Source: Magallana gigas (Eukaryota). Taken from it: a DNA stretch of 64,000 nt. The notes below the pieces were generated by a model that worked only from the letters and a program-made list of their open reading frames with translations, was not told where the DNA came from and did no database searches. The position numbers and the translations under genes are program-made. The stretch covers positions 55,118,001 to 55,182,000 of the forward strand of contig NC_088858.1 in NCBI RefSeq assembly GCF_963853765.1, in the 5' to 3' direction. Position 1 is the first letter of the stretch; every line of letters starts with the position of its first letter. Positions 7,789 to 38,256 of the stretch are shown here, piece by piece.

Positions 7789-7916
7789 NNNNNNNNNNNN
7801 NNNNNNNNNNNNNNNNNNNNNNNNNNNNNNNNNNNNNNNNNNNNNNNNNNNNNNNNNNNNNNNNNNNNNNNNNNNNNNNNNNNNNNNNNNNNNNNNNNNN
7901 NNNNNNNNNNNNNNNN
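7789..7916. other. Assembly gap (N run)
   Basis: Run of N. Confidence 1.
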
Positions 7917-8070
7917 TTATGTGAGGATACACTGCATTTTGTAGAAATGTACAAATGTACAAAACTTGCCAGACCTCTGGAAAGGAATTCTTCTGAAAGA
8001 GCATGCGAGCACAGGTATCACTCGGTGGAAATTGAAATTGATTGCAAAAAATGTCATAGATGCATAAAGA
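7917..8070 (-). pseudogene. Relic of a GRL exon 1 fragment
   Basis: LYASMTFFAINFNFHRVIPVLAC matches INASLTIFAINTNFSPVIPVLAC of the GRL at 12504-13493. The nucleotide similarity to ~12890-13000 is visible by eye. Confidence 0.8.
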
Positions 8071-8080
8071 TGGTGACGCT

Positions 8081-8345
8081 GTGGTGATGCTGTTTCCACA
8101 AAATATGACAGAAAAATGATCGGCGATATTCTACTACAACATTATTTATATGAATTTGATCCCTGCAAACTGTGCAAACACCCATTAAGAACAAGTTGTA
8201 AAAAAGGTTATCATTTTTCTGCCTACAACTACATCAAAATCACCAGTGACAACGAAGTCGAAGTGATGGGTTGTCACACGTTGTACCTGGCTTTTTTAAA
8301 GGTCGATATCGACTAGCAGTAGTCAAGGTAATTTAGTGCATACCA
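8081..8345 (+). pseudogene. Diverged relic of the last exon of the secreted-protein gene
   Basis: FSAYNYIKITSDNEVEVMGCH-TLYLAF matches FAANNYARITNDNGFEVKGCH...TLYMAF (3724-4130), with an internal deletion. Nucleotide similarity starts at the exon start (GTGGTGATGCTG vs GTGGAGACTCTG). Confidence 0.75.
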
Positions 8346-10485
8346 CCAGAAACCTTTGAGAGGGTCTGTGAAATAAAATTAATTTCATAACTACCCTTCG
8401 ATATCAAGCTGGATAAGGTGTTTCAGAGCGATTCACATAAAATCGGGGTATATTAGTAGTTTTTTTTCCAGCATGATTTACTGTATATTCCTAATTTTAT
8501 GCAAGTACATAATTCTGCGATTTTACCTTTTGCATTAAATCGTGGGAACAGAAAATCGCAAACGACAAAATGTTATCATAGTTTCATTTAGTTTACATCA
8601 GTTCTAAAAATTAAAACAAAGAATTTTTAACATTTTTTTAATGCATCAAATTCTCGAAATTCAGTTGTTTTACGTAGCAGAGGTGAGTTTCCAAACCATT
8701 AAATTATTTATAGTAAAAAAGCTGTTTTATTACTATTTAAATTTATTTACCTTCAAAGTGACGATACATTCTCATAGAAAAATCGAATGCATTGCTAATG
8801 CAACGTCAAAGTTGATTCTTCAAACAGATCGTATGAAGTACAGACAAGTGACTTTCTTCATATCGCTGTGAAATCAATCGAAAGCCCTAATATACCCGCG
8901 TTTTACACAAACATTTTTTCCATAAACTGGCTTATAAATTTCTATTCCAAAAAAAAAAAATATTTTAATGTAAAACATTTAAATATAATCAGCAAAAAAA
9001 AACATAATATAGGAAATGCAAAAAAATAATTTTCGAGTAAAAATATATTAGATGAGGAATTTTAATATCTTAAATTTCAAGTCAATTTTTGAATGCTTGA
9101 CTTATCAAATTATGTCATTTGTTTTCATTTGTGATTACTGTTTTCTCGACAATATTGATAAACACAGAGATATTCCTCAGAATTTTTTTAAACATTTTGT
9201 GTTGTCATTTAGCAATGAGAATAGGCTGTCTGTATTTGCACATGTACGAGGGGTCAAATGTGAGGGAGATGTGCGGCCATCTTGACATTTGAGAATAAGA
9301 ACGTAAACATTTCATGAAATGGTTTGTTTCTGCCCGAAACTGGCCAAAAACTGTTGCCAAAAGATATAAAAGCAAGTCCTCCATGTCATTGTGTTTGAAA
9401 AGTATGCATACAAGAACTGGACAATGCCTTTTCAATCACTCAAAACAGTTTTCGAACTTATTTTGAAGATTTAAAAATCTAAAAAAAAAAATATGAAGGG
9501 GTTCATTGGTGTCCTCTCTACAACCATTTTTTGAGAAAAAAGTTCGAAAACTTTGCTAATTTAAGTTGTAACTTTGCCTTAAAATGTCGTTATAAAATAG
9601 CTTTTGATAAAAGGTAATGAACAACGATAACAAAGCAAATATGACCACAAACATTGACACTTTATAACAAACTAGAGTCGTTCGTAAACGATATAATTTA
9701 ACTGCATTTCTATAGAACAATAGACACAATTTCAAACTAACCTTTAAACGAATTTCATTCATTTAGTGGTAAAGCGTTATGTTGATTGTTTGCATACCTT
9801 CTAACAGAGTTTTTTCCTCTTAATTGATTCGTTATGCAAGGGCATTTTCTATGGATGAACTATTTCTGATCCTACCTATCATTTTAGTAAAGTTTGCTTT
9901 GCTCCTGTTTTGTATTTTTTCTTTGTACTTTTGATTTTGAACATTGTTCGTTATTACCACATTTCATTATAATGTTGAAAAATATGAAAAGGCATAATTG
10001 CGCTAAAGCAGACATGGAATTAAATACAGACAAAAACAAAATTGTGTCTTAAAGAATTAAATACAGACAAAAACAATATTGTGTCATAAAGATATGATGT
10101 ATATGTGACGGTGTGCAAGTTATTATGCAGCTTACAAAGAAATAGCTTATAAGAATGAACAACATTTCTACTTAATGAAATGTCTAACATTTCTGTTACA
10201 AAATTGGATTAATTGCACCGAAAAGTATTTTCAAAGAAGAAACAAATTATTTTATTATTCATTATTTCTCATTTCGCTCTAAAAGAAAAAACAAAACAAA
10301 CACACGAAAATATATTAAATGAATTATTTTGTGGTTATCTCAAAGATATAGTACCACCGTAAGTCAGGCCATAGGTGAAGTATATACAGTTTTGGTGTCA
10401 TATCCTAGCCCCAAAAAGAACAAAGTAAAAAAAAGTTGACAAAGATATATTAATCTGTTTATTTCAGAAAAAACTTTCGAAATAT

Positions 10486-12412
10486 CTAGATTCGGAATTG
10501 AAGTAGCAGAAAAAAATATGTCACGAACAATCCAGCAAGCTACAATTCAAAAGAAAAGCAGTGACAAAATAAAAGTAAAAAGTATCCTAACACACTGAAT
10601 TTTTTTCTGATGCAAAACAATCCATTTGAATTATTGATTTAGATGCGTATTTGGATTTAAAATTAGATGTTTACTTACCGTAAGAATCATTTCCTTGGTG
10701 ATTGTGATAATACCGAGTACTGACAGACCAATAGACGGACCGTGAAGTTTGGTCATCAACAGGTTCAACTTTTAAACAGTTGTAAAAAATAATGTGAGAT
10801 AAATGAAATAATACACAATTTTGTTTTGACTTATCTATAGCGTCATGACATGATACAAAGTTGAGTTATTTAACTCTTAGATACAGTTATTTTTTCCTTC
10901 CTGAGAATGCCAGTGTTGTTTTGAGAGACAGGAAGGCTTTATCAAGAAAATACACTCGATTTAAAAAACACAAGACACAATTGTATGACGCAAGTATACT
11001 CTTAAGGTCAAGATCAAGTAAATGACAGGTGTCTACCGGTATATGAAATTCAAGATATAAATTCTTTTAATGATGCTTCATAACAATATCTTTGTTTGAT
11101 AGAGTGTATCGGGGCCTAAATTTAAACATACGAAAAATAATATTTTAAATTGTCATTTTCTATGAAATATAAAGGAAATAAGTAACAAATCTCGGACCTT
11201 TGTCCATTTTTGATGATTGTAATATATCTAGAATGCCTACAGTCCAAAATGACTTTGATGAATTTTGTTTCTCCCTTTTAAAATGATGTCAAATGGAATA
11301 AAGGTATCGGGATGACTTTTTCCATGATTTGGTAAAGAGGTCAAGAAACTGTCTTATTTTCTACATTATATACTAAGGTTTCTCCACCCTTAATGTTTTC
11401 ATGGTTTAATCTGTGTAATATTTGTTTAAATTTGAAGATTAATATGTAAACATTCAAACTGAACTTAAATATTTGTATGTTGCAAATATTTTATTTATGC
11501 TGTAGAAGCAAACACCTGTACACTATTAGGGAAATTATAGTGAAAACTGCTTTACAATCGAACATCACATTTTTAAAAACCGATTTCTATTTAATAAAGC
11601 AATTTTTTTAAAGAAATCAATCGTAATCCTTTATTTTATGTATTTTAACAGTTTAGGGCCATTTAAACTTGCCAGTATGTTTAAAACTTTGAAATAATGA
11701 TTCAAACTCACTGAAAATTAGTACATTTGTAATTCATGATAAATACTATCGAAACCTGCAAAGAAATGTTTACCTTGCCATGTAAAAAATTATGAATTGT
11801 AGTCTCAGTCAAGCTTGCCTATGTATGGTTTTATCAGTTTTTTCAATAAATCAGCTATTTTAACTCAAACTACCTTCTATACATTGATAAACATTAGTGT
11901 CATTTCACTTTACATAGCTTAAAATTTGTTAAACACAAATATAAATCAAGAAATATTGGCAAAACCATGCATCACATAACACTTATAACTGATAACGGTA
12001 AAATATTCCGGATTGCTCACAATGACGTCATGCGACAATCGAAAGACCTTAAAAGTACGGGGAAAATATTTATCAAATCAATTATGAAGTCATAATGGTT
12101 CTAGCACCAAAAAGACACTCCGAGATCATTTACTAGATCTTGACTTTAAACAGTTTTCAGATAACAGTGATTATTGCTGATGGTGGAAGTTAATCAAAAA
12201 TGATCATATATCAAAACGACAACGGAAATGTGTTAACAAACAAAACATTTTCAATATATAGTTGTGTTAAAGTATAGTATACCTCTATCATATCATCAAT
12301 ATTGGTATCATTGACATCGATATTAAAGATCTCTTTAGAAAGCCCATGTGCCTGAAAAACCCAAATGGATAGATAGATGGATATATGGTTAAATAGATGA
12401 TTTAATTTATTT

Positions 12413-12496
<84 letters not shown>

Positions 12497-13493
12497 TAAT
12501 GACCTTTTCGTGCAACGTGGCTGCTTTCTTTGTGATGATAAGCGTAGTCAATATGGCGAATGCGAGCCAAAAAGATAAAATGGAAATGTGTGCTAGATCG
12601 GTGCTAGGTACGGACTTGTTTATCATTTCGTAAGTCGTGAAACAAGCAATTCCCAAGTTTATCACAAAAACAGCAGCCAAATAAAATTGTAGACTCTGGT
12701 CAACGGTTTCAACCATTTTGCACAACTGCAAGTGCTTCTTCCGAATATTCTTGAAAATATCCAATCTACATGAATTTTGCTCAATCGTCGTCTGTTTCAT
12801 TACGTCATAGAGATCATCATATAGGAACTCAATGGCGCTCACAAGCGTGCAAAACATGACAACGGGGAAAATGGACACACCTGATGATATAATCTGTACA
12901 AAACTTGCCAAAACTCTGACTGAGAGAGATGTGTTGGGGAAAGGGTTGCATGCGAGCACGGGTATCACTGGGGAGAAATTTGTGTTGATTGCAAAAATCG
13001 TCAAACTTGCGTTAATAGTAAAATATGTCCAACCTATAGCGAGATTCCTTGCCCCACATTTTCTGATCCTATTACTCTTTGGGTTTAACATCAGACTCTT
13101 TGAAATTTGGTCCTCCACAGCATCGATATACTGCTTTACATAGCTTTCAAAATGATTTCTGTTATCGTAAAAGATGAACAAAACAATGCTGACGATTGCG
13201 TTTTGCAGGTAGAATAACAGAGTGATTATTCGTAGTGATGTCAGGTTTGGAATAAAATCTATTCCTACCCAGAAAGATGGAAGATACCTCAATACATTCA
13301 AACTCAGCAGAGTGCACACAAAGGCACAGTAGAACCGAAGAAAGTTTTCCGTTGAATGTTTTACAATTATAGATGTTTTTTTGGCTGGATCATCTATAGC
13401 GGGGTTAACCTCACTTTTCTGTCGTCTATGGCATATTCCAAATATTCCAAGAGACAAACGCAGTGGCTGCATTAAACGTTCAGCGCGCGCCAT
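10486..13493 (-). CDS. Gustatory receptor-like (7tm_7/GRL) protein 1, 400 aa
   Basis: Exons 13493-12504 (330 aa), 12351-12283 (AHGLSKEIFNIDVNDTNIDDMIE), 10768-10679 (LNLLMTKLHGPSIGLSVLGIITITKEMILT) and 10539-10486 (LAGLFVTYFFLLLQFRI*). All introns are phase 0 GT-AG. The TYxxxxxQF TM7 signature of the GR superfamily is present. Confidence 0.92.
12413..12496. repeat. (GATA)n microsatellite just inside GRL1 intron 1
   Basis: Pure tetranucleotide run starting 7 nt from the donor at 12503. Confidence 0.98.
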
Positions 13494-16400
13494 ACTAAAT
13501 GAAAGAAGCTGGTATTGTGTGCAGATTTATACGTCATCCCTCTCACAAAATATGATACTTGTAACTGATTGACATATGACAGAGTGTAACTAGATTAGGG
13601 TGTTTGGTATGCACAATTAGTTATTCTAGAGGTTGCAGTAGAGTGTTTTGGTATAAAATTATGATTTGATTGAAGATAATGACTGAGGAGAGCAGAATCA
13701 ATAGAACTGAGCGGATGAACAATAAAACACTTAACAGGACCATCGGAGTACTGTATTTTCGGATGGAAATTCAATGTATGTTTCGTTTTAAATGAAATCC
13801 GTAAACAAAATGGAAAGGAGGATTCATATTAAAGTGTTGCTGCTACATCAGGGGATATTTTTGATGGATTATATCGTCCATTAAGTACTCTGCTTTTACA
13901 AATAGTGTCATCGTTTTGTCAATACCTAAACCGCCCTGCTTCATTTTATATGCTATTGTGCATCCTTAAAATGCTTATTGATCAAAGGTCAAGATCTAAT
14001 AAATAAAGAAGCCAACCGATTTTTGAAAAACAACATTAATGAGTTCTTTTAATGATGCTTTGTGACAATATTTTGGTTTCATCAAATGTATCGAAGCTTT
14101 AAAAGTTTAATATAATAAACTAGATACAAAATTGTGTTTTAAGTGTAAATTAGGTTCCAAGTCTTGTATTTCATGACGAGTGAAATGCAGTATATATCCG
14201 ATACTCCAGCTTCTCTATAAACGTATTACAACATATAAAATGTTCCCGACTTCTTTTTTAAAACCATATAAAATTGATAAAGATATCTGGATTACTTTTT
14301 CCAGCTTTCAATTGCAAATAGAATGTTCAGAAACGGTTTCATATTCAACATATTGCCTTATAATTAGAGGGGATTGTCATGATTTTAGTCAAATTCTGAT
14401 TTTTCTGTTTTTATTATTTACAATGCTTTAGGAATGCATTTTAGTGATTGAATGAAATATGAGAGTCTATCAATGAGTTATAAGCAAGATACAGGGCATA
14501 CATTTCTTTGTCATGTAAACAAGGCTCGTGTCCTGGGTTTTTTACATAGGTTTGAACAATATACCAGTAAACATCTTTTCCAAGCTGATTTGTCTCTCTT
14601 CTGATTCATTTTAAGCATGAATAAACAGTTCCTAGCGTTTATCACATTCATTTTAGGTTTAAAAGTGGAATTTTCATTTCAACATTCAAAATGTAAACTT
14701 TGGTTACATAGCAATGAAATGTAAGTTCTGTAACTCACTTATAAGTCAATGAATAGCTCTCAAATTTTGGTTGCCTATTAATAAAGTATTACAAACATTA
14801 AAGTGGAAAAAATGACCTAACTCGTGACCATGCCCCTTCAAAAATCAAAGTACTGAGAGTACTAAAAGACGGGGTCTTGAAAGTTTGAATTTGTAATTAT
14901 CATGGATTTCCTCCAATATACTTCCAAAATCAATGAGTTTGAATTATTTGTTACAATCTATGTTAATTCGGCTTTTTTGCAATTGTCTAATACTTTGTCT
15001 AAATTGTACTCAATCCCGGCCGTCATAATTGTAGAAAATTGACACAACGGTATATTATGTAAAATAAGACCCCAAGGAAAAATTTTAAAAATTACTACTA
15101 ACCGGGAAAATCAAACAACAATATCAAAGTAGATAATTTTAACCATTAAATTTATTCAATTTTGTGTTCCAAGGGAAAATCCACAAGTCGGACGGTATCC
15201 GTAATAAAAGTTTTATGAAAACCCCGAAAACTCTAAAACTGCTGAATTAACAAACAAAGTGAACATTAGTTAACCGATAACAAACACAGGCACCTGACGT
15301 TAGAAATATTTTTTTTACAATAAGATTCCAAGAACTTTGACAATAACAAGATATGCCACGGTCGCCATTTTGATTTTTAAGACCAACTTATCTGACACGA
15401 TTTTCTTCATTTGTGATTCATGCAAAATTAATAGGTAAAATTAAATCCGTTCGCCACTTACTACTTTTTTGTGTAAACTCGTGCATCACCTACACGAATT
15501 ACGATACAACCGTTCCTTTCATTAAAAATCATACTCCGAAAATCAGAGACATAAATAACAGAGATGGTCAACCCCGCCATTAGCGTGTAAATGTTACGGG
15601 ACCAACCTTACTTTGAGAACTACAAGTGCAACAGCAATCTTGTATAAGTCATTAAATCTGAACCTGATAGTGAAAATGAACCTGAACCTGTAAATATTTT
15701 AAGCATGTTTTATTTATGAAATATTTACAAAAACTTTTTATTTAGTTTTTAAATTACTTTTTTAAAACTTATTGACTTTTCACAAAGTAATGGTAATGCA
15801 TTACTTTACTCATGTAATGGTAATGTAATGCATTACTTCAAGAAAATTAAGTAATGGTAATGGTAATTTAATGCCATAATTAAAGAACTTGGTTCTTCAA
15901 TCGAGAAGATTGTTTATATTATATGATATATAAGTTTTCCAAAATGTATAATCTATTATAGATTTTGCTTACAATGCATTGTTTAAAATTTAAATTCAGT
16001 TTAATCAACTAAAGAGCCAACGAACGAGAAGGCAAATTCAGACTTGTTTTTTACTTTCTTTGTACAAAATTCCTTTAGAGACGAACACCAGTCATACCGC
16101 AAGTAGACTGGAAGCAAATGAAACACCTATTTAATTTGTATAACATCTGTGTATAACCCGTCCCGATTTTAACTTCGGCTTGCGCATGAAGTTTGGTAGT
16201 ATTAAGGTGAAAGATTGTCAAAATAAAATTCACAACTTTTCAAAAATGGCACATTGCGTTTGGGAACTTTAATTTCGATTCCACCACCAACCTCTTCTAT
16301 TGATTAATGAGCTCGTACAGCAACTGAAATGTCAACGGCGCTATGCATTCAGTTACGTAACTCAATCCACATTTGAACCCGCGCAAGAATATTTTGATCA

Positions 16401-16595
16401 AAAAAACTATTTGTTTATTTTCTAAATAGAATTTTGTTTATACACAGAGGACTTAAAAAGATTTAATGTGTGTTTTTATAATACAAATTTACTGAAATGC
16501 ATGAAAACTTTCTGCACTATTATCTTAAGCGTAGACTCAATTCATGTGTTCTACGCGTGCCTTCCGGTTTGAGACTTCGGCTGACAGTAAACCAA

Positions 16596-16621
16596 TAGAC
16601 GGGGTCACGTGACCCCGTCTA
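16596..16621. repeat. Perfect 26-bp palindrome TAGACGGGGTCACGTGACCCCGTCTA
   Basis: Seen directly; centred on CACGTG. Probably part of a repeat element. Confidence 0.9.
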
Positions 16622-16882
16622 AAAATTGTATGCTATATAGCTCACTTGTAACTCAACAAATGACACTTAAATTATGGTTGCCTATTCAAAACGCCCGACT
16701 AAAGCACATTCTGACTATGTCCCTTTAAATTCATGACGTACTAATGACATGTTGGAAAACAATAGGAAAGCAACATTGAAGCCTCTATTTTCTATCACGC
16801 TTCACGGTGGTATCTGTAAAGGAAATTTGGAGTGTATGTCAAGTTTCCCTTATTAGAAAATGAATTTAAACAAGTATTTCAT

Positions 16883-17300
16883 TTAAAGGAATGATCGGAA
16901 ATAATGATATATAGATAAATAGAAGCAATCAACATGAACAGTTTGATGTAAAATGATTAAAAAAATACTGTATTTTTTACAAAATATAGAATATTTTGAA
17001 TCTGTACACCATAATGTCATCTTATAAACCGTCAACAAATTTAATTTTGAAACAAATTTGGGGAAAGCCGTTCGTAGACTCCTTGTCAAGTTTTATATTT
17101 TTAACGTAATTATTAAATGTTAATACATCTTCTTCTTCAGAATACTAGGTAGGGCTCCTCAAAGAGCATTAAATTAACACGTATACAAAGAAAGAGTTGT
17201 ATTAAAATAATTTAATGCGACTGAAAAACATTGAATGCCATCATAACTTGCTATTGAGGTCGCATTTTAACGTAACCTCGTTTATAAATTTCGATGTGCA
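16883..17300 (+). repeat. Dispersed ~420-bp repeat; second copy at ~55640-56052
   Basis: TTTAAAGGAATGATCGG...CGTAACCT is shared by both loci with high similarity by eye. Confidence 0.8.
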
Positions 17301-18386
17301 TGCTTGAATTAACAGGTCGAACTGTATTTAATGTATGTTCGCATCTCTTAAGATAAATGAATTGAAATAAAACTGAGTAAAATGTTATAGCTTAAAGTTT
17401 TTATAAGAACTACTTATGCAAGCGGAATGTGTGTGTACGTGGAAGCATTTGCCGGATGCCTCATATGGACACAACAGTGATCGGCCGAAGCCGATCACAA
17501 AAATTATTTCCAATTAATTAATGTGATGTCTTAATCAATCTAAAACTAAAAACAACGCTTTGAAATCATTTTTAGATTTTATTTACTTAAAAGAAAACGT
17601 TTTCAAGTTAAAAAAAAATTTAAAATGTGCAAATGCTTTATGAAACGCTTAAAAACGCATGCATATAATGATATTTATAGCAAGATGAACAATCTGTGTT
17701 TATTTCAAGGAGTATAATACACAAATAAACGCACATGATTTTAACAAGTATTACAATGAATTACTGAACTTTTCCAAAATATAAATATTTTCAAAAATGA
17801 CAAAGTCACAACAGAACATTGTTTAGTACTATATACATGCTTAATTACTTATATCGTGTAAGACTAATGTAAAAAAAAAAATTAATATGCTTGATGTTAC
17901 GTTTGAAGTTTGTAAAATTCAATGTTATTTTAATTGTTAAATGACTGGTTTTTATACAATTAATGGCAAACATCTAAATGATAGGAATTTTATTTCCATA
18001 CTGTGCGGAACTCTTTAGTAAAGCTTGGTTTGAACAATCTGTATACAAATGTATATAAACAGAGTTTGACTATGAGAACAATATAATTATTATAATTTTG
18101 TTGGCTAACTTCATGCTGTTACTATTCTTGATTACGTCATTTATATGTGTCGAATGATTCCTTTTTATCTTGGTGGTGAAATGATGATGCTACAAAAAAA
18201 CAGTTAAAGATATATACTGACGTAAATTCAGCTTAAAATATTTGATTTTTACTTATTTTAATGACTACACCTTTGAAGTAAGAGAATGAAGATAATTACT
18301 ATATAGCTAGTAATAAAATCTAAAAAAAGAAAAAAAAAAAAAAAAAGGTCCGTGTGCCTTAAACCAAGGTATGATAAAATACGTAC

Positions 18387-21300
18387 CTATATTTTAAACT
18401 GAATCAGCAAAAAGAGGTATGTCATGAAAACTCCAGCGAGCTAAAATCAGAGAAGTATTTTTTTTTTCGTGTTTAACCATACTACGTGGCTAGATTAAGT
18501 CATACTGAACAAGAAATTCAATTAAACATACTCAACAAAATATTTTCTATTGTCCGCGCACGTCTTCATATTTCTAGCAAATATTTCACAGCTCTAATTC
18601 ATACTCAATTACAGCATACAATCAATTACATTGATGTCAAGCAACTACGGCATATTGGATTTTAGCTGTTAAAGGAGACTTTCTGTTTGTTTTACAGATG
18701 AAAGCAATAAATTTATGTATTTGTAGGAAAGTGGTTTTACAACATGATCAATTAGAGCACCATTCGTCTATATAGAAAGAGCGCATAGAATGTATGCCAT
18801 TTTAATGCTTTATTATGATATAAACTAAATATGAAACAATTGTGTCTGCTCTTTGCTCATATACATAGGGAAAAAACTAAATTAAAATGAATTTTACCTT
18901 CTTGGTACATGAATGTCTGTTGAATTTTTTTTTCAAATGCTTTTTTTTAAATCTTGTAAATATCCAGCATGCCTTTTTGTATTCACTTTAAAATATTATG
19001 CGACTTACCGTTAGAATCATTTCCTTGGTGATGGTTATAATACCGAGTACTGACAGACCAATGGACGGACCGTGAAGTTTGGCCACCAACAGGTTAATCT
19101 GAATATATAATCCATACACCATTCTCTAATTAAAGTATAAATCTTCGCAATATTGTGTACCCACCTATATTAATATTGTATACCCACCTTTATTTGCTTG
19201 CGAATCAAATGTTACTGCATGTTCTGAATACATTACATTTTAACCACCCACCAGTTTATCTCAACTAAATTTCGAAATGAAAGTGTATATATTTTGTAGA
19301 TATACATGTACTTCCTATATTCTTTATTTTATACCATACTCTTTATATAAAGGATATTTGGATATGTCTGCCAGCAAAATTAATGACAGGAAGCAATGCA
19401 TTTATTGATGTAGGTATACGTAACAAATCTTTAACATATTCACTAAACATTCCTTGTATCTTATCTAATCTTCGCAATTCATACAATATTGCAATATATT
19501 TTAGACATTTAAGTCTATTTAAACAGATTTATATTTTGGTACTCACGTGCGCAAGATCCTGCATTGTAGCTCCGTCCAAATTGACATCCATTATCAACGG
19601 AGAGAGACCATGGGCCTAGAACAGTGAATATTTTAAATCAAATTCTTTATTTTAAATGACATGTATCGCTTTTGCAAATTCCTACTTAAGGTCAGACGCG
19701 ACCTATCTTCCATTTTTTTTCTATCTTTACAATGTGCAATTTAGTAATTCTATAATTATATTTTCATGTTATATGATACTTTTTTATTTAAGCATGACTT
19801 TATTAATAAGCATTTAAATGCATTTTTCATGCTGTTTTACGGAAAATTCTAAATATTCTAGCTCCGAAAATAGCCTGGTAATATACCCTGAATTTTTGGG
19901 AATAAACATTTTTATATGCTAATAAATAAGAAAAAATATATCAAGGAAAATTCTATAAAAATGAGAAACGTCTCATGTGTCCTTAAGATTAATTAAGATT
20001 CGGTGACCACGTAAAGTCAAGGATNNNNNNNNNNNNNNNNNNNNNNNNNNNNNNNNNNNNNNNNNNNNNNNNNNNNNNNNNNNNNNNNNNNNNNNNNNNN
20101 NNNNNNNNNNNNNNNNNNNNNNNNNNNNNNNNNNNNNNNNNNNNNNNNNNNNNNNNNNNNNNAATCTGATTGGTTTAGACGCAGTTAGTAATCTGTTCTA
20201 TTACCCTTAGCGTTAGCAACACACTTGGCAACGGGTAACACTATATAAATAGTGCCTGTTTGGGAGGGTAACAGTTGAAATTGACACCCCGAGAAAACCA
20301 TTGTCAACCGACGCGAAGCGGTGGTTGACAATGGTTTTCGAGGGGTGTCAATTTCAACTGTGATCCTCCCAAACAGACACTATTTATTTTGTTATACTGA
20401 ATGTCTTTTTTAAAATTTTTAAGAAAATCTTACTGCTTTTATATAGGAATAACGTGAATTCTACAGCGAACCGTACGCGCATAATTTTCGCGCATGTAAC
20501 ATTTTTTAATGTTACCCGTTGCCAAGTGCGTTGCTAACGCTGAGGGTAATAGTAAATATTATTAACTGCGTCTTAACCAATCAGATTTCAGTATTTAACA
20601 TGAAAGTATAACAAAACGAATTGTTACATGCGCGTAAATTATGCACGTACGGTTCGCCGTAGAATTCACTTAATTTCTATATAAAAGAAGTAAAATTTTC
20701 CTTACAATGGTTGTCTCGGGGTGTCAATTTCAACAGTTACCCTCATAAACGGGCACTATTTATATTATATATATATCTTTGATTCTTACAAAAAAAAAAT
20801 ACTTATTAAAACACACTTCAGAAAAGTGCAATTAAAAATATGCTGGACAAATTATATTCCTGCTAAGCTAATGAAAACTTTTATTGCGATAAAAAAATCT
20901 TTATATTTATGTGCCGTTTTATTTGGAAGTAAATTAAACAAAACCAAATCTGCTGCAGACATAAATATGAAATGGTATGGAAAACCGTTTGTTCATCGTG
21001 CAATTCAAGCAGAGGGTCGTTTATCTAATTTTTCGAGGATCTTTTGAATTCATTGACTCTCAAACTTTGACAGTTTGTCTCTGCAAACACACGTCTTTTG
21101 TCATTGGGCCAAATAATATGTAATTGAAGTATAGTGACAAAAACCTGCCTGAATTGATTATAACATTCTTAATATCCTAACAAAATCCCTCAATAAGTAA
21201 GTACTTTTCGTGTGTTTCTTCTGTTTATTAAATTCGCGAGTGCTTGGCCATGCGTTAAAATTTATAATGTTCTTGAATTTTTTTAAAAATATATATATTA

Positions 21301-30434: not shown

Positions 30435-33400
30435 ATGGAGGAACTGAAACAAGCACTGACAGACATACAGACAACAGAGAGTAGCCTTATAGGGTATCTC
30501 AACGATGTCCTCAATGGTAAGAGATGTCCACAACGTCCACAGTTTATGACATGCATGATTTAACTCGAGTTCCTCTAGCCAATAGTTAATTAAAATACAT
30601 TGTTACATTGTACACTTCACTTTGACCTTTACTGCATGAACAACTAGGGTTGTGGAGTTGAGTATGGATAAACATGTGGCTTAAATGGGAAGATGAATTT
30701 TATATAAACATGTAGATATCAAATTAATATATAGATTCTTATCATAGAATGAAAGGTTAATATTTATTACAAGTGTTGTGAAATGTAAATGTACTAGATA
30801 TCTTGGTACAACCTTTGACCCTGCTCCATACATTACCCTGCTCCATACATTACCTGGAGCTTCAGCATGACTACATCCATCTAACTTATCAGAGTCTATT
30901 CTATATTTAAATATACCTATTTTGTTTGTTATATCTACCCCTGTTTGTTGCATGTACCCATGATTTCTTTATTCTTCACAAGGTATGGCTGTATATATAT
31001 ATGTATGCATTGTATTTGTGTACCATGTTGACCATCTAATATCAATTACAGTAAAACACGGTTATAGCGAACACACTTAAAATGTATTGGTGCTTACAGC
31101 GAAGTGATTTTCATTCCCCATGACTGTATAATATGTTGTAAACTTAACGGAGTTAACGAATTTTGCTTATAGCAAAGTAAAATCACTTGTCCCTGGCACT
31201 TCGTTATAAGCGTGTTTTACTGTACACGGCATTTATCACTGACTACTTGTAGAGCCTGATGGTGTGTCCCAGTTAATGGATGGAAGAATCGGAAGGCTGT
31301 TTGAGATGGCCAAGTGCTACAAGTCTGCATTTGACAGGTAAAGACAATATTGGTGTTTACTAGGCTAGTAATGCAAATTTTGCTTGTAAACATGTTAAAA
31401 AATTATAACATATTTTTACTAAATATGTACCTTTGAGTATTTATTTTAACCTTGCAATGAAATTTTGAAATTGCTTTGACAGATTGAAGGTAACATCAAG
31501 AGCTGAGTTTCAAGAGCACATCAAGAGAGGTTACAGGTACGCAGAGAATTTATTTCCTCTTTCTTCGTCAAATGAGATCGAAAGACTAGCTTAATCAGGA
31601 TGATAAAGAAAGTGACAGCTAGTGTTAAAACAGAAGAACTGAAGGTTGGAAAAAAATATGATGGAAATAAAAGCTAGATCGAGAAATTCTGAATTCATCA
31701 ATCCAGGTCTTTTCATCGATTCTTTAATAAATGTTCGTTTTCAATGAAATATATAGTGAAAAAAAAAGAAAAAAAATGACTTTCTTTGGCACCTGAGTGT
31801 ACATGTTCTGTATGTATTATATATTATGCAGAGTACATATACCATGTAAATATGCTATATATTATACAAGGTACAGTTGTCAGTAGTTAAATGTACTTGG
31901 GACTGTATCAGGATCGACAGAGCTGTCTGCCAGTCAGTAAATTAATATTTATAAGTTTCTTATTGTACAAGGTTTAATTTGTAAACAATGATGTGTTTAT
32001 ACATGTAAGTTAAAAGAGCTTCCTGTCTGAATAAATGAACTGGCTAGTCTTTAACTGATAGCGGACATGGATATTTCACTCAATGAGTCATGTATCCGCA
32101 AGTCCTTGCAAGAAGCTGTTGTTATCTGAAAAAAAATTACATAAGTTATCACAATCATATGCATGGGAGATTCTTTTGATCACAATCTGCCCCAATTAGT
32201 TCTTTAGCTCTCTATTCTTTTTCTATTGATGGGCCTCAAGTTGCAGAGACCTAACGTCATTTCAACAGCAATGCCTAAATTTAATTGTGATGTCATCTGA
32301 GATAGCTACTTTTTTTTCATAAATTACGTGTTGTAACAGACACAGTGTGTACACCTTAAAAGTTCATATCCCCCCCCCTCCCAACATGCACATATTGAAT
32401 TAATAAAACTACATAACTTTTTAAGTGAGTTCGTTTTTTTTTCCTCTCTATTAATCAGCTTACCCTGGTCCTTTCTTGAATCAAACAAAAGAGACAACTC
32501 TTCAAACCATGTTCCAAAGTACTGTTTTCACTGTATAACCACAATATTGATAATTATATTGCTGTTAATGTCTTAAACTCTTTGAATTTGCAGTGATCAA
32601 TCAGCATATATCACAAAACGTGCTTATAACATGCAACTAAAGATAAATACAGCAGATGCAACTCGATCATATAATCTAATTAAATTCTCTTGACTTTATG
32701 TCTTATTTTATTAGATATGCAGAAATACGAGATCTAGATGAAGACATTGTGAATTTAGAGGTAATTTTTAAAAGTAATTCTTTTATCTATCATTCATTTC
32801 ATCAAATATTATATTTCTTTCTTTCTGTGTTTCTATTGATGACCTATCACCTATCACCTAAATTAGTTCCATATTGAATCATTTCAGTAATTCACTTCTT
32901 TGATCATTTTGATTTATGTACAGTTCTAATGACATTAATTAAATTACTGGGTTTTTTTGACAGGAAGAATGGGATGGGATATTACAGAGAATTGACCAAT
33001 CACTGAAGGAGGATGACACAGGTGTTGAGCTGGGAGACACAGGACCAGTAAATGTCATGTTGACTGATGCTAGAACCGGGCAGGAGACCAGTTTAACGGA
33101 GTATCTAGGTCACCAGAGCCTCGTTTTGGTGCTTTTAAGGCATTTCGCCTGACTTCCATGACGACAGCACATTGAACAAGTTGAAAAATCAGAGGTGTGA
33201 TGTAAAACTTATGGTTGCTCAATTATAAGTAAATCTCACAATCTAACTTAAAGGGGAATTTGTATATAATGAGATCACACTTCAATTAAAGAAAAATTTA
33301 GTAAGAACAAATACTCAAGCATTAAATCTGTAGGACATGAAGTATGCAATGTATGAATAAATTTAACCCCCCTCTTAAACAAAAAAAATTGTTTATATAG

Positions 33401-36400
33401 TAGCCATGTTTTGAAGTACATGTAAATGATTTAGGAGCAGATATCAGATTCAGGCGGTCAGGCAATAGTAGTGTCTTTTGGTGACCAAAAAGGGGCACAG
33501 CAGTGGCTAGTAGAGACCTCCTGTCCATTCCCCATGCTCCTGGACTCACAGAGAAAGGTAGAGAAGTTCTGAATGATTAATTAACATATGTTAGTAAGGA
33601 CCTTCTTTTTATAAGGATTATAATCTGTAGAAGCTATTTAACAAGACCAGGGAATTTTGGTAGCCTAAGGATGTAACTATCTTTTTCTTGCGCCAAAGCA
33701 AGTTAAAAATAACTCTGGTTTCAAGTGAAATATACACAGATTATGTAGTCTTTTAAAATTAGCTCAAAAGCTAGCCGAATCATGTTAATTTCAAAGAGCA
33801 ATGGCTGAGTGGCCAGCAATGAAATAGACAGGCCTACATCACAATGCTGTTTGACACAACTATCCAAAGTCCAAGCTCCTGTTAAAATGGTTCTAATTTG
33901 TTACTGGTTCTCGGTTGGAACAATAATGGCAGTTTGTACCATCATTGAACAGTTAAAATATGTCTGTGAATTTTAACACAGTTTTTAGACCTTGTTTCCA
34001 TTCCTTTAGACATAATTTTAAGGTTTGCAATATGTCAGTTATGTACATGTATGTTTTAACTTGTTACTAGGTGTATACTGCATTTGGTTTGCATCGTTCT
34101 GTCAGCAAAGTAAGTATGCCTCATTATTTTCTATCATTGCCTCAAGTCTCTTCATAATTTTATAGAAGTACAAAAGAGGCCTAAATAAGACTTTGTTCCA
34201 GCATGCATACTGTAAATTCCTAATTCTAAAACGTGAGGAATTATTAATATTATCCGTGTAAAATTGCGAGAAGCACCCTTCGCAGATTTTAAAATCTCGC
34301 CATTATTTTTTGAGAGTTGAAAACAATAAGAAATAAAGAAAGAAGTTCTGCGTTTGCAATTTTATATTCTCCCGATTTGATACAAAATAGCAGGATCGCA
34401 GAATTAAATACATGTAGGTCCCTACTTGCGTAATGTAAGGAATTTACAGTAGTTTACTGGTTCATTCCTGTGAGAATATTCTAAAGCTTTGACCACAATT
34501 AATTCACCTTCAAGTTGGTGGAAAATATCTATTATAATATATGTCCTCAATTTATGTTTAATTAAAATAATTGCTTGGCATTATTGTTTGATAAACATTT
34601 ATACTGAACAGGTTTGGGGAGTAGAAGAGATGGTTTACTATGCAGAGTCAATGGCCAAGAACATTCCGTTACCCAAACCCTCTCAGTACGTCAATGATGA
34701 CCCGCAGCAGGTAGATTAATTTAAGTCCTGGAGATCAAGCCCAAGGTTTCTTCATCCAGTCACAAATTAAATATCTAAGATATTTGTATTCTTATTTTTT
34801 CTCAGATGGGTGGAGATTTCATCATTGACAAAGATGGAGTTGTACAATACATGTACTGTAGTAAGAAGTCCATGGATAGACCGTCTGTACAAGATATTAT
34901 AGACAATTTGAAGGTATGCAGTGTCTGTCTTAACTGTAATCTCCTGTTTGTAGAGTTTAATCAGTAAGGGCCTAAGGGGGACTATACTATTGTTTTATGC
35001 ATAGATAATGCACTGACAATCTACATCATTCTTTGTGTGGCGATTGATTGATTATAATTTAGATTAAGTCCAGCGTAAAACATGCTTTTTTTTAATTTGC
35101 CAAACCACCCCCTTCTTACTTTGAGGCTGAGTATCAGAGAACCTTAAGTTATTAATATTAACACTTTCTAATAAACAATGTACTGTACACAGGGTTATCC
35201 CCCCCACCCCCATGTGTATGTGCTGCTACTTTACACTTGCAAAAGGTTTCACCCTCACACAGTTTTGTGGTAGATACTTACTCTTTCTTTTTAACACAGT
35301 AATTAAAACTTGTTTTGAATTTGCTCAGTCTTTAAAAGGCCTGCGAATGATAGCATATATTGTTTAGCCGCCTAACTAAAAGTCATTTTTTTGAAAGTTG
35401 TCTAATTAAAGTTATTTTTTTATAATAATGTAAACATTTATGTATATTTTCATTAAATATAAATGATTTGGTCAAACAAAGAGAGAAAACTTTTTATTTT
35501 GGGTTAAAATAGCGAATTTCATAATAGAAAATAACGGAAAACAGAAATGTTTTTTAAAACATCTCCAACCCCTCCCCCCCACCGGGAAACAAATATTCCT
35601 TTTGAGGGGTTTTAATTATTGTTATTTAGCATATTTTTACCAAAGGGTTTGTTATTTCACGGGGGGAAACATATGTCTACAGACCGAAATACATTCCAAA
35701 AAAAGAATTTTGCTTTGTAAATTTGTGAAAAATAATTAACAGATATGAATTAAATGACAGAACTATATATGATATGAGTTGAATTTTGCCCCCATAATTC
35801 GCCATTTTTAAAGTGTTTCGGGTATATTAAAATATTATGTTATTTTTTAGTCTAGAGGAGTTGATATTAAATATATTTTTCACCGATTTATTTGCACTCA
35901 TTTGCAGCATATGACGTCAGAAGTGACGCTTTTTCTATAATTCAATCAAAATCAGTCAAAAATTGACATTTTTCTTACCTTTAAACGAATGGGAAATATA
36001 GAGCGCATGCTTGAACAAGGAAAATTTGTATGTCAGTTATTAGTCTTGGCTGGTTACATCTCTGATTAAAATATGTTGTTTGTTCAAGCGTGCGCTCTAT
36101 GTTTTTTGAAAGAAAAACTGCTTGAAAACAAGCTGTTTTATGCTAAAAATGCATAAATGGCGGGAAAAGACTGTCTTCATGATACCATATTTCTAAATTG
36201 TGGGCACTTGAATCAAAATGAACATAATGTATAAACATCACATATATATCTGTACAAAGAAAACAAAGATTTACAGTAAAATGATGATGTTCATTTTAGG
36301 GGGCCATTTTAGGCCCTTATCATATATAGTCCTTTACTTTAATATATACCGGGTAATTATATGTTATTAAGTTTTTATGCACATATTGGCTGCTAAATGA

Positions 36401-36728
36401 TATTTTCCTCACTCATAGAGACCGATTTCAATGAAATTTTTTTAAGACCCCGCGTTAGCAAAACTTTTGTTTAAAAATAATTTTTTTGATTACAAATTTT
36501 ATTTTGATATAAATTGATTAGGATTTGATTTTACTTTTTTAATTAGTAGAAAAGTTAGTTTTTGAATATCTGACAGCAATTCTGAAATATTTGGATGTAA
36601 AATGTAGGCGGGACAAGGAGGTTGCTGACAAGGAGGGCCAAGGAGTGAAAATAAAATGGGAGCGAATGTTTCCCTGTATGTATAGTATATTATGATTTCA
36701 TTCTTTTTTTTTGCAGAAACTCCAATGA
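30435..36728 (+). CDS. SELENOL: Selenoprotein L (thioredoxin-like fold, UxxU motif), ~290 aa
   Basis: Exons 30435-30516, 31253-31337, 31483-31536, 32715-32760, 32964-33194, 33441(or 33435)-33557, 34071-34109, 34612-34710, 34806-34913 and 36717-36728, all phase-consistent. VLLRHFA-TGA(33150)-LP-TGA(33159)-RQH, followed by VVSFG, LLDSQRK-VYTAFGL and DDPQQMGGDFIID...DRPSV, all typical of SelL. A SECIS lies downstream. Confidence 0.93.
31049..31222. mobile_element. TA-flanked Tc1/mariner(pogo)-type MITE family B (other copies 41741-41923, 46775-46915)
   Basis: TA|CAGTAAAACACGGTTATAGCGAA...TTCGTTATAAGCGTGTTTTACTG|TA; three copies in the window. Confidence 0.85.
35759..36333. mobile_element. Non-autonomous DNA transposon with imperfect TIRs
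   Basis: AGAACTATATATGATATGAG...GCCCCC versus the reverse complement of the right end AGGACTATATATGATAAGGG...GCCCCC. No clean TSD. Confidence 0.5.
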
Positions 36729-36745
36729 AAAGACCTTCATTTCCA

Positions 36746-36801
36746 GTAGTGATGAAAAGCTAAACTGAAAACTCGTGAAAGTTTAGTTTGGAGGGTGCTA
36801 C
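36746..36801 (+). promoter_or_regulatory. SECIS element in the SELENOL 3'UTR
   Basis: Helix I GTAGT/GCTAC; A-UGAA / GGAG non-Watson-Crick quartet; 10-bp helix II AAGCTAAACT/AGTTTAGTTT; apical AAA. Confidence 0.9.
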
Positions 36802-38256
36802 GAAAATGGTGTTTTTACATTGGAAACATTTTAAATTTACTAGTATGTATCTAGTGGGTAGTTTAATAGATTTGATTGATCAGCAGGTTTGAAATATGTC
36901 TTTCATATTGTTATCATATTGTTATGTTCCATTTAGTGATTATCTTCAACTCTCTCTACATATATTTATAGGTAATTGAATTCTGTTATTCATATCCATA
37001 TTCCCAAATACATTAAAGTTTGTACAAATAATTTTCCAATTGCAATTATTTGTGTTTCTCAATGCACTATTGCTAAAAATGTTTATGTATGGTTATTTAC
37101 TGAATGTTGGGTATGTCAATTAACTTTTGAATTTTAGAATGAACTCTAAAAAAAAATTGTCATTTGTTTTTTCATACGAAAACATGTATCATAATAAAAA
37201 ATATTATTACCAAATCAAGCATTTATTATTTGTGTTGACATCTAATGTGCATCATCTAAAACCCTAGAACTCCATCTAGACCAGTTATTCTTTTCTCTTT
37301 ATCACCCCTGCGAATGTGTTCGGAATGTTTTCTTTATCGTTGCTAAGTATGTAATAATTTATAAATCTAGAGTTGCTTGAATGAAAGTTCACGAGAATTG
37401 TTCAGTTCCTGTGAAATTTGGAGCGGAAGTGTAAGTGTTCGGATAATATACTCAAATTATGTGAGTACTGATCGTTTTTCATATCATAACCTACTTTGAT
37501 TTATGTTAGAACATTAAATTCTTTCAAGATACATTGTATATGTCTTTATCGTCTAGTGGTTATTTAAACTAAACGATAATATTCAAAACAGTTATCATTC
37601 GTGTTTAACCACTCTACACGTGGTTGAAAATATAAACATTGGGTTGCTTTATAAAATCATAGCCATGTTTAATGCTTTTGGTGTGCAATACCGTGATTTT
37701 TAAAAAAGAATGGGTTTCTGTTTTGTATAAAAAAACTAGTATATATCAAGCCATTTTCAAGAAACATTCTGCATAGAATAGTATAGTCTGTTTCACTATT
37801 GATGCTTTTACTAGGTCAGGCGCGGATCGAATATTAATCCGTTGGGGGGGAGGGGGGGTACTACTAAGCATGTTTATTGTTGCAACAGCAGAAAAAACCT
37901 AAAAAACCTATAATTTTATTGTTACATTTATTTCTAGAACTCATTTTATCCACAAATTAATGAAGATATAAAGTTTAAAATCAATAAACTTTTAGATTCT
38001 ATATTTGACTTCAAAAACCTAGTTTTGATGACATACCTGTTCTAAAATACATGTACAGTATATAATTTTTTAACTTCAATTTTTAAATGTTAAGAAATTT
38101 CTCAATTACCCAACACATCTCGCTTCTTCATTCATAAAATCAATATTGATTTTGAATTTTTCAAGTTAAGTAATTTCAAATTAATATAACTTAAAAAGTG
38201 GATTAAGGAGACCTCTACCCTCTACAAAATGTTTATGAGGTGGCTTTATAACTTAA

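What the first reader, a model, noticed from the sequence alone, without database searches (positions are those of the whole stretch)
32964..36801. Selenoprotein L with a double-UGA UxxU redox motif and SECIS, invisible to ORF callers
Seen: exon 32964-33194 reads RHFA-TGA-CTT-CCA-TGA-CGA in frame, with SelL-like sequence continuing over five more exons and a canonical SECIS at 36746-36801. Established: SelL is the selenoprotein family with two Sec in a UxxU thioredoxin-like motif forming a diselenide, restricted to aquatic organisms. Inference: automated annotation will probably truncate, split or mis-splice this gene. It is a rare case of two Sec insertions three codons apart driven by one SECIS.
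Basis: partly seen in the sequence, partly recalled or inferred. Interest (0 to 1): 0.75.

Follow-up and report, generated by a model that had tools for sequence, protein, structure and literature searches.

The report
Oyster selenoprotein L gene, UxxU motif
This is a real, expressed oyster gene for selenoprotein L, a redox protein whose two in-frame "stop" codons three codons apart are read as selenocysteine; the family is well known, so the main value is correcting public gene models that cut or splice around the motif.

Summary
Exon 32964-33194 reads ...LLRHFA-TGA-CTT-CCA-TGA-CGA... in frame. Five downstream exons follow, and a SECIS hairpin lies at 36744-36803, 24 nt after the stop codon.

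RNA contigs from three studies and stranded raw reads confirm every GT..AG junction. They carry both TGAs unchanged, and no listed junction removes them.

It has 10 exons (30435 to about 37200) and encodes 292 aa with Sec at positions 152 and 155.

Six orthologues (31-73% identity) all keep A-U-L-P-U-R as TGA..TGA, with synonymous changes around it. A freshwater snail and percomorph fish have C-x-x-C at the same place. Orthologue SECIS elements keep ATGA/AA/GA and the helices, although the stem sequences differ completely.

Profile searches link the protein to GenBank "selenoprotein L" entries. An AlphaFold model of the snail Cys homologue puts the motif at the strand-to-helix junction of a peroxiredoxin-like thioredoxin fold, where ResA and PRXL2B have CxxC.

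Public models of this gene (K1PYT0, XP_019928933.1) splice around the motif. Models in other molluscs truncate or split the gene.

Verdict: a correct call and an ordinary member of a known family. The same scan flagged other selenoproteins (MsrA, SelJ) elsewhere in this genome.

The parts
30435..30516 (+). Coding exon 1. ATG at 30435 (context GACAGATGG); donor GTAAGA.
   Evidence: The frame-2 ORF holds MEELKQALTDIQ.... The transcript-derived protein P0001 matches the spliced N-terminus at 147/151 residues, across this junction. The junction itself lay outside the stretch laid with reads.
31253..31337 (+). Coding exon 2
   Evidence: The acceptor ...cttgtag|AG and the P0001 match support the start. 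The 3' junction 31337|31483 is seen in 4 RNA runs.
31483..31536 (+). Coding exon 3
   Evidence: Junctions 31337|31483 and 31536|32715 are seen in 4 runs.
32715..32760 (+). Coding exon 4
   Evidence: Junctions 31536|32715 and 32760|32964 are seen in 4 runs.
32964..33194 (+). Coding exon 5. It holds the first strands of the peroxiredoxin-like fold and the U-L-P-U motif.
   Evidence: Translation. RNA contigs of X2, X4 and X11 cover 32962-33192 or further with 0 differences.
33150..33161 (+). TGA CTT CCA TGA: Sec152-Leu-Pro-Sec155, the redox motif
   Evidence: Both TGAs are conserved in six orthologues, while the Leu and Pro codons vary. They align with CLPC of a snail homologue and, through it, with CEPC of ResA.
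33435..33557 (+). Coding exon 6. One X2 contig skips it.
   Evidence: Junctions. Pfam AhpC-TSA_2, E=1e-3 on this exon alone.
34071..34109 (+). Coding exon 7
   Evidence: Junctions seen in 4 runs.
34612..34710 (+). Coding exon 8
   Evidence: Junctions.
34806..34913 (+). Coding exon 9 (MGGDF...DRPSV block)
   Evidence: Junctions. The columns are invariant in the family alignment.
36717..37215 (+). Last exon: three codons, stop TGA at 36726-36728, then the 3' UTR. Poly(A) signals are ATTAAA at 37012 and AATAAA at 37193. The 3' end is approximate.
   Evidence: Junction 34913|36717 is seen in 4 runs. The X4 contig ends near 37021. The X2 contig runs past 37149.
36744..36803 (+). SECIS element, form 1: helix I, ATGA/GA core, 10-bp helix II, A-rich apical loop
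   Evidence: Orthologue SECIS elements sit in the equivalent 3' UTR position.

Best explanation
This is the oyster orthologue of selenoprotein L (SELENOL). It is a single-copy, 10-exon gene whose mRNA is about 1.2-1.4 kb.

During translation, UGA codons 152 and 155 are both recoded to selenocysteine. One SECIS hairpin in the 3' UTR directs this. It lies 449 and 440 nt downstream of the two UGAs and 24 nt after the true stop. It acts through the standard eukaryotic machinery (SBP2, eEFSec, Sec-tRNA).

The 292-aa product has two parts:
- a family-specific N-terminal helical bundle of about 105 residues;
- a C-terminal peroxiredoxin-like-2 / thioredoxin-fold domain.

U-L-P-U sits at the end of a beta strand and the start of the following helix, which is the CxxC position. 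The two selenols are inferred to cycle between a diselenide and the reduced form, making the protein a low-potential redox enzyme. Its substrate is unknown.

Shown here: gene structure, expression, retention of both UGAs in mRNA, conservation of the UGAs, a SECIS in orthologues, the fold, and kinship with named SelL proteins.

Inferred: actual Sec insertion, the diselenide chemistry (taken from published work on fish SelL), and likely nonsense-mediated decay or a 151-aa fragment when Sec insertion fails.
For: - **Sequence and splicing:**
- **Strand:** in the stranded raw reads the first mate lies on the minus strand, so the RNA is plus.
- **Database ORFs stop at the UGA:** of the 40 relatives found by phmmer (E <= 1e-3), about 35 end exactly at ...LLRHFA.
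- **UGAs conserved:** five transcript contigs (L007, L011, L012, L014, L015) and genomic L010 read A-TGA-Leu-Pro-TGA-Arg. About 135-140 conserved in-frame residues follow.
- **Translation continues past UGA2:** the 11 codons after UGA2 show 4 synonymous changes and 1 non-synonymous change against L010.
- **Cys forms:** ACLPCR in Biomphalaria and SCLMCR/SCLLCR in fish.
- **SECIS:**. Orthologues score 29.7 and 23 bits for Rfam SECIS_1, or match by motif. Their helix II sequences are unrelated but still pair.
- **Sec machinery:** a tRNA-Sec gene at 77 bits in this genome.
- **Copy number:** single copy.
- **Domain and fold:** Pfam AhpC-TSA_2 and AhpC-TSA above cut-off on the old model of this gene and on the Cys homologue. 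The AF2 model has pLDDT 88, with CLPC between strand 152-157 and helix 164-175. Nearest folds are PRXL2B (PDB 9usa, TM 0.83 by target) and PRXL2C.
- **Named relatives:** 'selenoprotein l [Plakobranchus ocellatus]', 'selenoprotein L [Mugil cephalus]' at E=1e-31, and AFDB clusters 'Sell' and 'Selenoprotein L'.
- **Family definition:** PMC2397514, PMC3316567, PMC13134290.
Against: - No protein-level evidence is available here (no 75Se labelling, mass spectrometry or ribosome profiling).
- The oyster SECIS scores below Rfam's gathering threshold (18.1 vs 35 bits).
- My descriptor thresholds were set after seeing the element.
- The exon 1/2 junction rests on a database transcript ORF, not on reads I laid.
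- One RNA contig skips exon 6.
- 34 further joints over the 6-kb stretch laid with reads were not displayed, so minor isoforms are not excluded.
- The structure model is of a 39%-identical Cys homologue, not of the oyster protein.
Confidence: 0.93

Rival explanations
1. The UGA-bearing segment is removed by splicing, as in the public models K1PYT0 and XP_019928933.1. The real protein would then lack the motif and be an ordinary Cys-free peroxiredoxin-like protein.
For: Two public gene models use internal donors that jump from before the motif to exon 6. 34 minor joints were not displayed.
Against: - All listed junctions leaving this exon start at 33194.
- Contigs from three studies run through 33150-33161 unchanged.
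- The jump deletes the strand-helix junction that carries the active site of the fold.
- Orthologue transcripts all keep the segment.
- The first exon of those old models maps 38 kb downstream, so they are chimeric.
Confidence: 0.03
2. The UGAs act as true stops. The gene would make only the 151-aa helical N-terminal fragment, or be a decaying pseudogene.
For: Gene callers across many species output exactly such truncated ORFs. Sec insertion is never fully efficient.
Against: - The downstream frame is conserved at 31-47% identity from sponges to fish and completes a Pfam domain.
- Synonymous changes dominate right after UGA2.
- Both TGAs are invariant while neighbouring codons drift.
- A SECIS is present in each lineage.
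- Cys forms exist.
Confidence: 0.02
3. The UGAs are read through by a near-cognate tRNA (Trp, Cys or Arg) without selenocysteine.
For: Both UGAs are followed by C, a leaky termination context.
Against: A conserved SECIS in the 3' UTR has no role in plain readthrough. Homologues replace the positions only with Cys, the chemical analogue of Sec. The genome carries tRNA-Sec.
Confidence: 0.02

Closest known systems
Vertebrate (fish) selenoprotein L, SELENOL/SelL
   Same: It has the same two-domain layout of about 300 aa and the same ...LLRHFA-[UxxU]-RDH... context. The spotted gar model W5NFI6 lacks exactly those four residues. It has two Sec two residues apart served by one SECIS (PMC3316567), a peroxiredoxin-like motif and a diselenide (PMC13134290, PMC2397514), and an aquatic host.
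   Different: It is only 30-36% identical to the fish proteins compared here. Some percomorph proteins named selenoprotein L carry CxxC instead of UxxU (P0221, P0248). The oyster SECIS lies unusually close to the stop codon (24 nt).
Biomphalaria glabrata A0A2C9LHP9, whose RefSeq models are named 'peroxiredoxin-like 2C'
   Same: It is a full-length molluscan homologue at 39% identity, with the same N-terminal helical domain and the same motif context, RHFA-x-LP-x-R.
   Different: It has Cys at both positions (CLPC) and belongs to a freshwater snail, so no recoding is needed.
PRXL2 family (PRXL2C/AAED1; PRXL2B prostamide/prostaglandin F synthase, PDB 9usa)
   Same: These are the nearest folds, with TM 0.83 by target to 9usa. 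PRXL2C is the top Swiss-Prot structural hit. The CxxC (C44/C47 in PRXL2B) is at the equivalent site.
   Different: They are about 19-22% identical, contain Cys only, are about 200-226 aa, and lack the N-terminal helical bundle. They are separate families.
Bacillus ResA thiol-disulfide oxidoreductase
   Same: The CEPC active site aligns residue for residue with CLPC of the snail homologue, and so with ULPU.
   Different: The sequence relation is weak (E about 0.04). ResA is a bacterial extracytoplasmic thioredoxin-like protein without Sec.

Membership tests
Selenoprotein L (SELENOL) | Two in-frame UGA codons separated by two codons (UxxU) | tested here: met
   TGA CTT CCA TGA lies at 33150-33161, in frame. 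It is kept in mRNA. It is conserved in six orthologues.
Selenoprotein L (SELENOL) | The motif occupies the CxxC position of a thioredoxin-fold / peroxiredoxin-like domain | tested here: met
   Pfam AhpC-TSA_2 and AhpC-TSA match. The motif aligns to CLPC of the snail Cys form and to CEPC of ResA. In the AF2 model it sits at the strand-to-helix junction. The structure was modelled on a homologue, not on the oyster protein.
Selenoprotein L (SELENOL) | One eukaryotic SECIS in the 3' UTR serves both UGAs | tested here: met
   A single SECIS-like element lies at 36744-36803. It is the only descriptor hit in the window. It is below the Rfam gathering score. Function was not assayed.
Selenoprotein L (SELENOL) | Sequence homology to recognised SelL proteins, including the N-terminal region | tested here: met
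   The profile of the N-terminal half hits 'selenoprotein l' (Plakobranchus, E=6.5e-52), 'selenoprotein L' (Mugil, E=1.3e-31), gar, amphioxus, Ciona and a sponge. AFDB clusters 'Sell' and 'Selenoprotein L' are the top fold matches for the N-terminal domain. An Atlas lead agrees. These names are automatic annotations.
Selenoprotein L (SELENOL) | Host has the selenocysteine machinery and is aquatic | tested here: met
   A tRNA-Sec gene scores 77.3 bits in the same genome. The host is a marine oyster, per the names on near-identical proteins.
Selenoprotein L (SELENOL) | Sec is really inserted at both sites and forms a diselenide | not testable with these tools
   This needs 75Se labelling or mass spectrometry. 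It is published for fish SelL only, as cited in PMC2397514 and PMC13134290.
PRXL2C (AAED1) | Cys-only CxxC protein of about 226 aa without an N-terminal helical domain | tested here: not met
   The oyster protein has UxxU, is 292 aa, and has a helical extension of about 105 aa. It shows only 19% identity in the structural alignment to mammalian PRXL2C.

The most novel reading that the evidence does not exclude
The N-terminal helical bundle of about 105 residues is conserved from sponge to fish. It has no Pfam family and no significant PDB fold match. It may be a SelL-specific docking module for the unknown partner or reductant of the diselenide. Termination at UGA152 would release the bundle, plus the first strands of the catalytic domain, as a stand-alone 151-aa product. 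The gene's output would then switch with selenium supply.
Probability: 0.12. Interest if true: 0.5.

Novelty: new member of a known kind. Interest (0 to 1): 0.3.

Why it matters
The family, its UxxU motif, its single SECIS and its presence in aquatic invertebrates have been published since 2007, so nothing here changes the concept.

The practical value is in annotation:
- The older public models of this oyster gene (UniProt K1PYT0, RefSeq XP_019928933.1) are chimeric and splice out the active site.
- The same gene is truncated or split in at least four other mollusc genome annotations.
- The corrected 10-exon, 292-aa structure, with RNA support, gives a clean reference for molluscan SELENOL.
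- It also predicts a specific tryptic peptide (HFAULPUR) to look for in oyster selenoproteomics.

SELENOL's function is still unknown, and oysters are a tractable, selenium-rich system in which to study it.

Tried and rejected
- **Rfam, whole window at gathering threshold:** nothing found. The SECIS appears only with the E-value threshold.
- **Pfam on single exons:** only exon 6 gave a weak hit, because the exons are too short.
- **First coordinates for exon 6:** They were corrected with a script.
- **First start codon:** I took ATG 31276 as the start. This was rejected when P0001 showed an upstream exon.
- **Alignments A3 and A4:** these mixed N-terminal and C-terminal fragments. MAFFT placed the N-terminal fragments on the wrong half, so both were discarded. 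A5 and A6 were used instead.
- **MAFFT alignment of five SECIS elements:** it put the oyster ATGA one column off. I tabulated the helices by script instead and ran no formal covariation count.
- **SECIS of L015:** not convincingly found.
- **SECIS of L012:** it has a G.A/A.G interruption in helix II that my script missed.
- **Look-up of P0014:** nothing found.
- **Papers not held:** the founding SelL paper (Shchedrina et al. 2007) and the oyster selenoproteome paper (Baclaocos et al. 2019, PMC6885538). Whether oyster SELENOL is already listed there is unverified.
- **PDB fold search of the N-terminal domain:** no significant match, best E 0.13.
- **Rival readings:** pseudogene, spliced-out and plain-readthrough readings were rejected, as set out under the rivals.
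Full report
**1. What is in the sequence**

This fits the near-identical database proteins, which are named Magallana/Crassostrea gigas.

Exon 32964-33194 translates without frameshift to ...GHQSLVLVLLRHFA*LP*RQHIEQVEKSE. The two stops are TGA at 33150-33152 and 33159-33161.

**2. Gene structure and expression**

I laid three RNA-seq contig sets from three studies, plus one stranded poly(A) raw-read run, on 31150-37149.

- **Junctions.** GT..AG junctions appear at 31337|31483, 31536|32715, 32760|32964, 33194|33435, 33557|34071, 34109|34612, 34710|34806 and 34913|36717. Most are seen in all four runs.
- **Both TGAs retained.** Contigs of 571-800 nt cover 32962-33192 or beyond with zero differences. 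No listed junction removes 33150-33161.
- **Strand.** In the stranded run the first mates lie on the minus strand over the exons, so the RNA is plus.
- **Isoform.** One X2 contig skips exon 33435-33557 (junction 33194|34071).
- **First exon.** A further 5' coding exon (30435-30516, ATG at 30435) was found because the transcript-derived database ORF P0001 begins MEELKQALTDIQ... P0001 matches the conceptual splice 30516|31253 at 147 of 151 residues.
- **Full coding sequence.** It has 10 exons, 879 nt and 292 codons, with Sec at 152 and 155 and the stop TGA at 36726-36728.
- **3' end.** Poly(A) signals lie at 37012 and 37193. Contig ends near both suggest two 3' ends.
- **Copy number.** The gene is single-copy in the 564-Mb genome.

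**3. Are the UGAs coding?**

I ran an exhaustive phmmer search with the 63 residues before the first TGA. It returned 40 relatives at E <= 1e-3. About 35 of them end exactly at ...LLRHFA. This is the signature of ORF callers stopping at a conserved UGA.

I then fetched the DNA of six relatives: five transcript contigs (31-47% identical over the full length) and one genomic exon (73% identical).

- All six read Ala-TGA-Leu-Pro-TGA-Arg.
- The Leu and Pro codons vary: CTT, TTA and CTG for Leu; CCA, CCG and CCC for Pro.
- In each transcript the frame then continues for about 135-140 conserved residues to a normal stop.
- Against the 73% orthologue, the 11 codons after the second TGA carry four synonymous changes and one non-synonymous change.

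Cys forms exist at exactly these columns: ACLPCR in the freshwater snail Biomphalaria glabrata, and SCLMCR/SCLLCR in percomorph fish. A spotted-gar Ensembl model lacks precisely the four motif residues.

**4. The SECIS**

The hairpin at 36744-36803 has these parts:

| Element | Coordinates |
|---|---|
| Helix I | 36746-36751 / 36796-36801 |
| ATGA | 36752-36755 |
| Helix II (10 bp) | 36757-36766 / 36780-36789 |
| 13-nt apical loop, starting GAAAAC | 36767-36779 |
| GA | 36791-36792 |

- **Rfam score.** SECIS_1 aligns end to end at 18.1 bits, below the curated 35. The reported E of 1.2 is multiplied by 4227 families, so it is about 3e-4 for this one family in the 601 nt searched.
- **Chance control.** A strict descriptor finds only this site on both strands of the window: ATGA, at least 9 contiguous helix II pairs, AA at the start of the loop, GA, and at least 5 helix I pairs. 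It found 0.025 sites per shuffled window. Its thresholds were chosen after seeing the element.
- **Position in the mRNA.** The SECIS core is 449 and 440 nt from the two UGAs and 24 nt from the stop.
- **Orthologues.** Their 3' UTRs carry equivalent elements. L007 scores 29.7 bits and L014 23 bits against SECIS_1. L011 and L012 match by motif.
- **Covariation in kind.** Helix II sequences are unrelated (AAGCTAAACT, GATCACAGC, AGACAGACTGT, GGGGGTAGGT) but all pair. I did not run a formal count.
- **Not found.** I could not find a convincing SECIS in L015.
- **Machinery.** The genome has a tRNA-Sec gene at 77.3 bits. Other notes of this scan flag MsrA and SelJ selenoproteins elsewhere in it.

**5. 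What the protein is**

- **Domain.** Pfam AhpC-TSA_2 and AhpC-TSA pass their cut-offs on the old public model of this gene and on the Cys homologues.
- **Structure.** The AlphaFold model of the snail Cys homologue has mean pLDDT 88 and pTM 0.85. It shows a helical bundle (residues 9-112) followed by a thioredoxin/peroxiredoxin fold. CLPC lies between strand 152-157 and helix 164-175, the classic CxxC position.
- **Nearest solved fold.** Human PRXL2B (9usa, a C44S/C47S mutant), TM 0.83 by target.
- **Nearest Swiss-Prot models.** PRXL2C, at about 19% identity.
- **Sequence match to ResA.** phmmer aligns CLPC to the CEPC active site of ResA.
- **N-terminal bundle.** Modelled from the oyster-type sequence (pLDDT about 90 over residues 1-100), it has no significant PDB match. 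Its top AlphaFold-DB cluster matches are named 'Sell' and 'Selenoprotein L'.
- **Named relatives.** A profile of the N-terminal half hits 'selenoprotein l' of a sea slug and 'selenoprotein L' of fish. It also hits amphioxus, Ciona, sea cucumber, scallop and a sponge.

**6. Comparison with the literature**

SelL is described as having two Sec two residues apart, inserted with a single SECIS (PMC3316567). It has a peroxiredoxin-like motif and a diselenide bond (PMC13134290, PMC2397514). [quoted passage not shown] It has been found in several marine invertebrate genomes (PMC3473315).

All sequence-level defining features are met here. Sec insertion and the diselenide cannot be tested with these tools. 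The founding paper and the 2019 oyster selenoproteome paper are not in the held library. From my own knowledge the latter probably lists this gene, but I could not verify that.

**7. Annotation**

- UniProt K1PYT0 and RefSeq XP_019928933.1 ('uncharacterized protein LOC105343367') use internal donors that delete the motif. The RefSeq model loses the 22 residues around it.
- Their first exon maps 38 kb downstream of the gene.
- In Plakobranchus, Mactra and Patella the gene is cut at the first UGA, and the remainder is called as a second gene.
- Mya arenaria has a 'LOW QUALITY' model that jumps the motif.
- I could not inspect the current RefSeq annotation of this assembly.

**8. Mechanism and verdict**

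The most likely mechanism is standard SECIS-dependent recoding of two closely spaced UGAs. The product would be a two-domain redox protein whose ULPU forms a reversible diselenide.

- **If Sec insertion fails.** A 151-aa fragment would result. The UGA lies upstream of five exon junctions, so nonsense-mediated decay would be expected. This is inference from general knowledge.
- **Rival readings.** The spliced-out, truncation-only and plain-readthrough readings are each at about 2-3%.
- **Overall.** The finding is correct and cleanly supported. It is an ordinary member of a well-described family, and its interest lies mainly in fixing the annotation.

Noticed in passing
window 33194|34071 junction (skips 33435-33557): One RNA contig in run X2 joins exon 5 directly to exon 7. 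This removes 41 in-frame residues of the peroxiredoxin-like fold. It may be a minor isoform or an assembly artefact.
   Followed up: no
window 31150-31349, 33550-33949, 34150-34549, 35350-36750: These intronic stretches have RNA depth hundreds to thousands of times that of the exons. Reads lie on both strands, with many mismatches and loose ends. They look like widely expressed interspersed repeats, not part of this transcript.
   Followed up: no
G000:C6:55188831-55188950 (about 6.8 kb beyond the window's end): The first 40 residues of the old public models (K1PYT0, XP_019928933.1) map here, 38 kb downstream of the gene on the same strand. Those models are therefore chimeric.
   Followed up: partly
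proteins P0048, P0075-P0176: Many metagenomic or prokaryotic 'peroxiredoxin/AhpC' proteins of 125-140 aa are found. The one whose sequence I read, P0048, begins just after the motif position (it starts LCRH...). They may be N-terminally truncated calls of bacterial SelL-like selenoproteins.
   Followed up: no
proteins P0221, P0248, P0100, P0187: Percomorph fish proteins that GenBank names 'selenoprotein L', 'peroxiredoxin-like 2C' or 'prostaglandin F synthase-like' carry CxxC (SCLLCR). The spotted-gar model deletes exactly the UxxU residues. Naming in this family is inconsistent.
   Followed up: partly
window exons 5, 8 and 9 (e.g. 34668, 34677, 34877, 34880): Amino-acid polymorphism between oyster haplotypes is high. 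P0001 differs from the window at 4 of 151 residues, and the old RefSeq model differs at 6 of 125. The variant letters also appear in RNA contigs of X4 and X11.
   Followed up: partly
window 37012 and 37193: Two poly(A) signals are present, with RNA contigs ending near each. This suggests alternative 3' ends, both downstream of the SECIS.
   Followed up: no
window 7789-20162: 266 N letters lie within this span.
   Followed up: no
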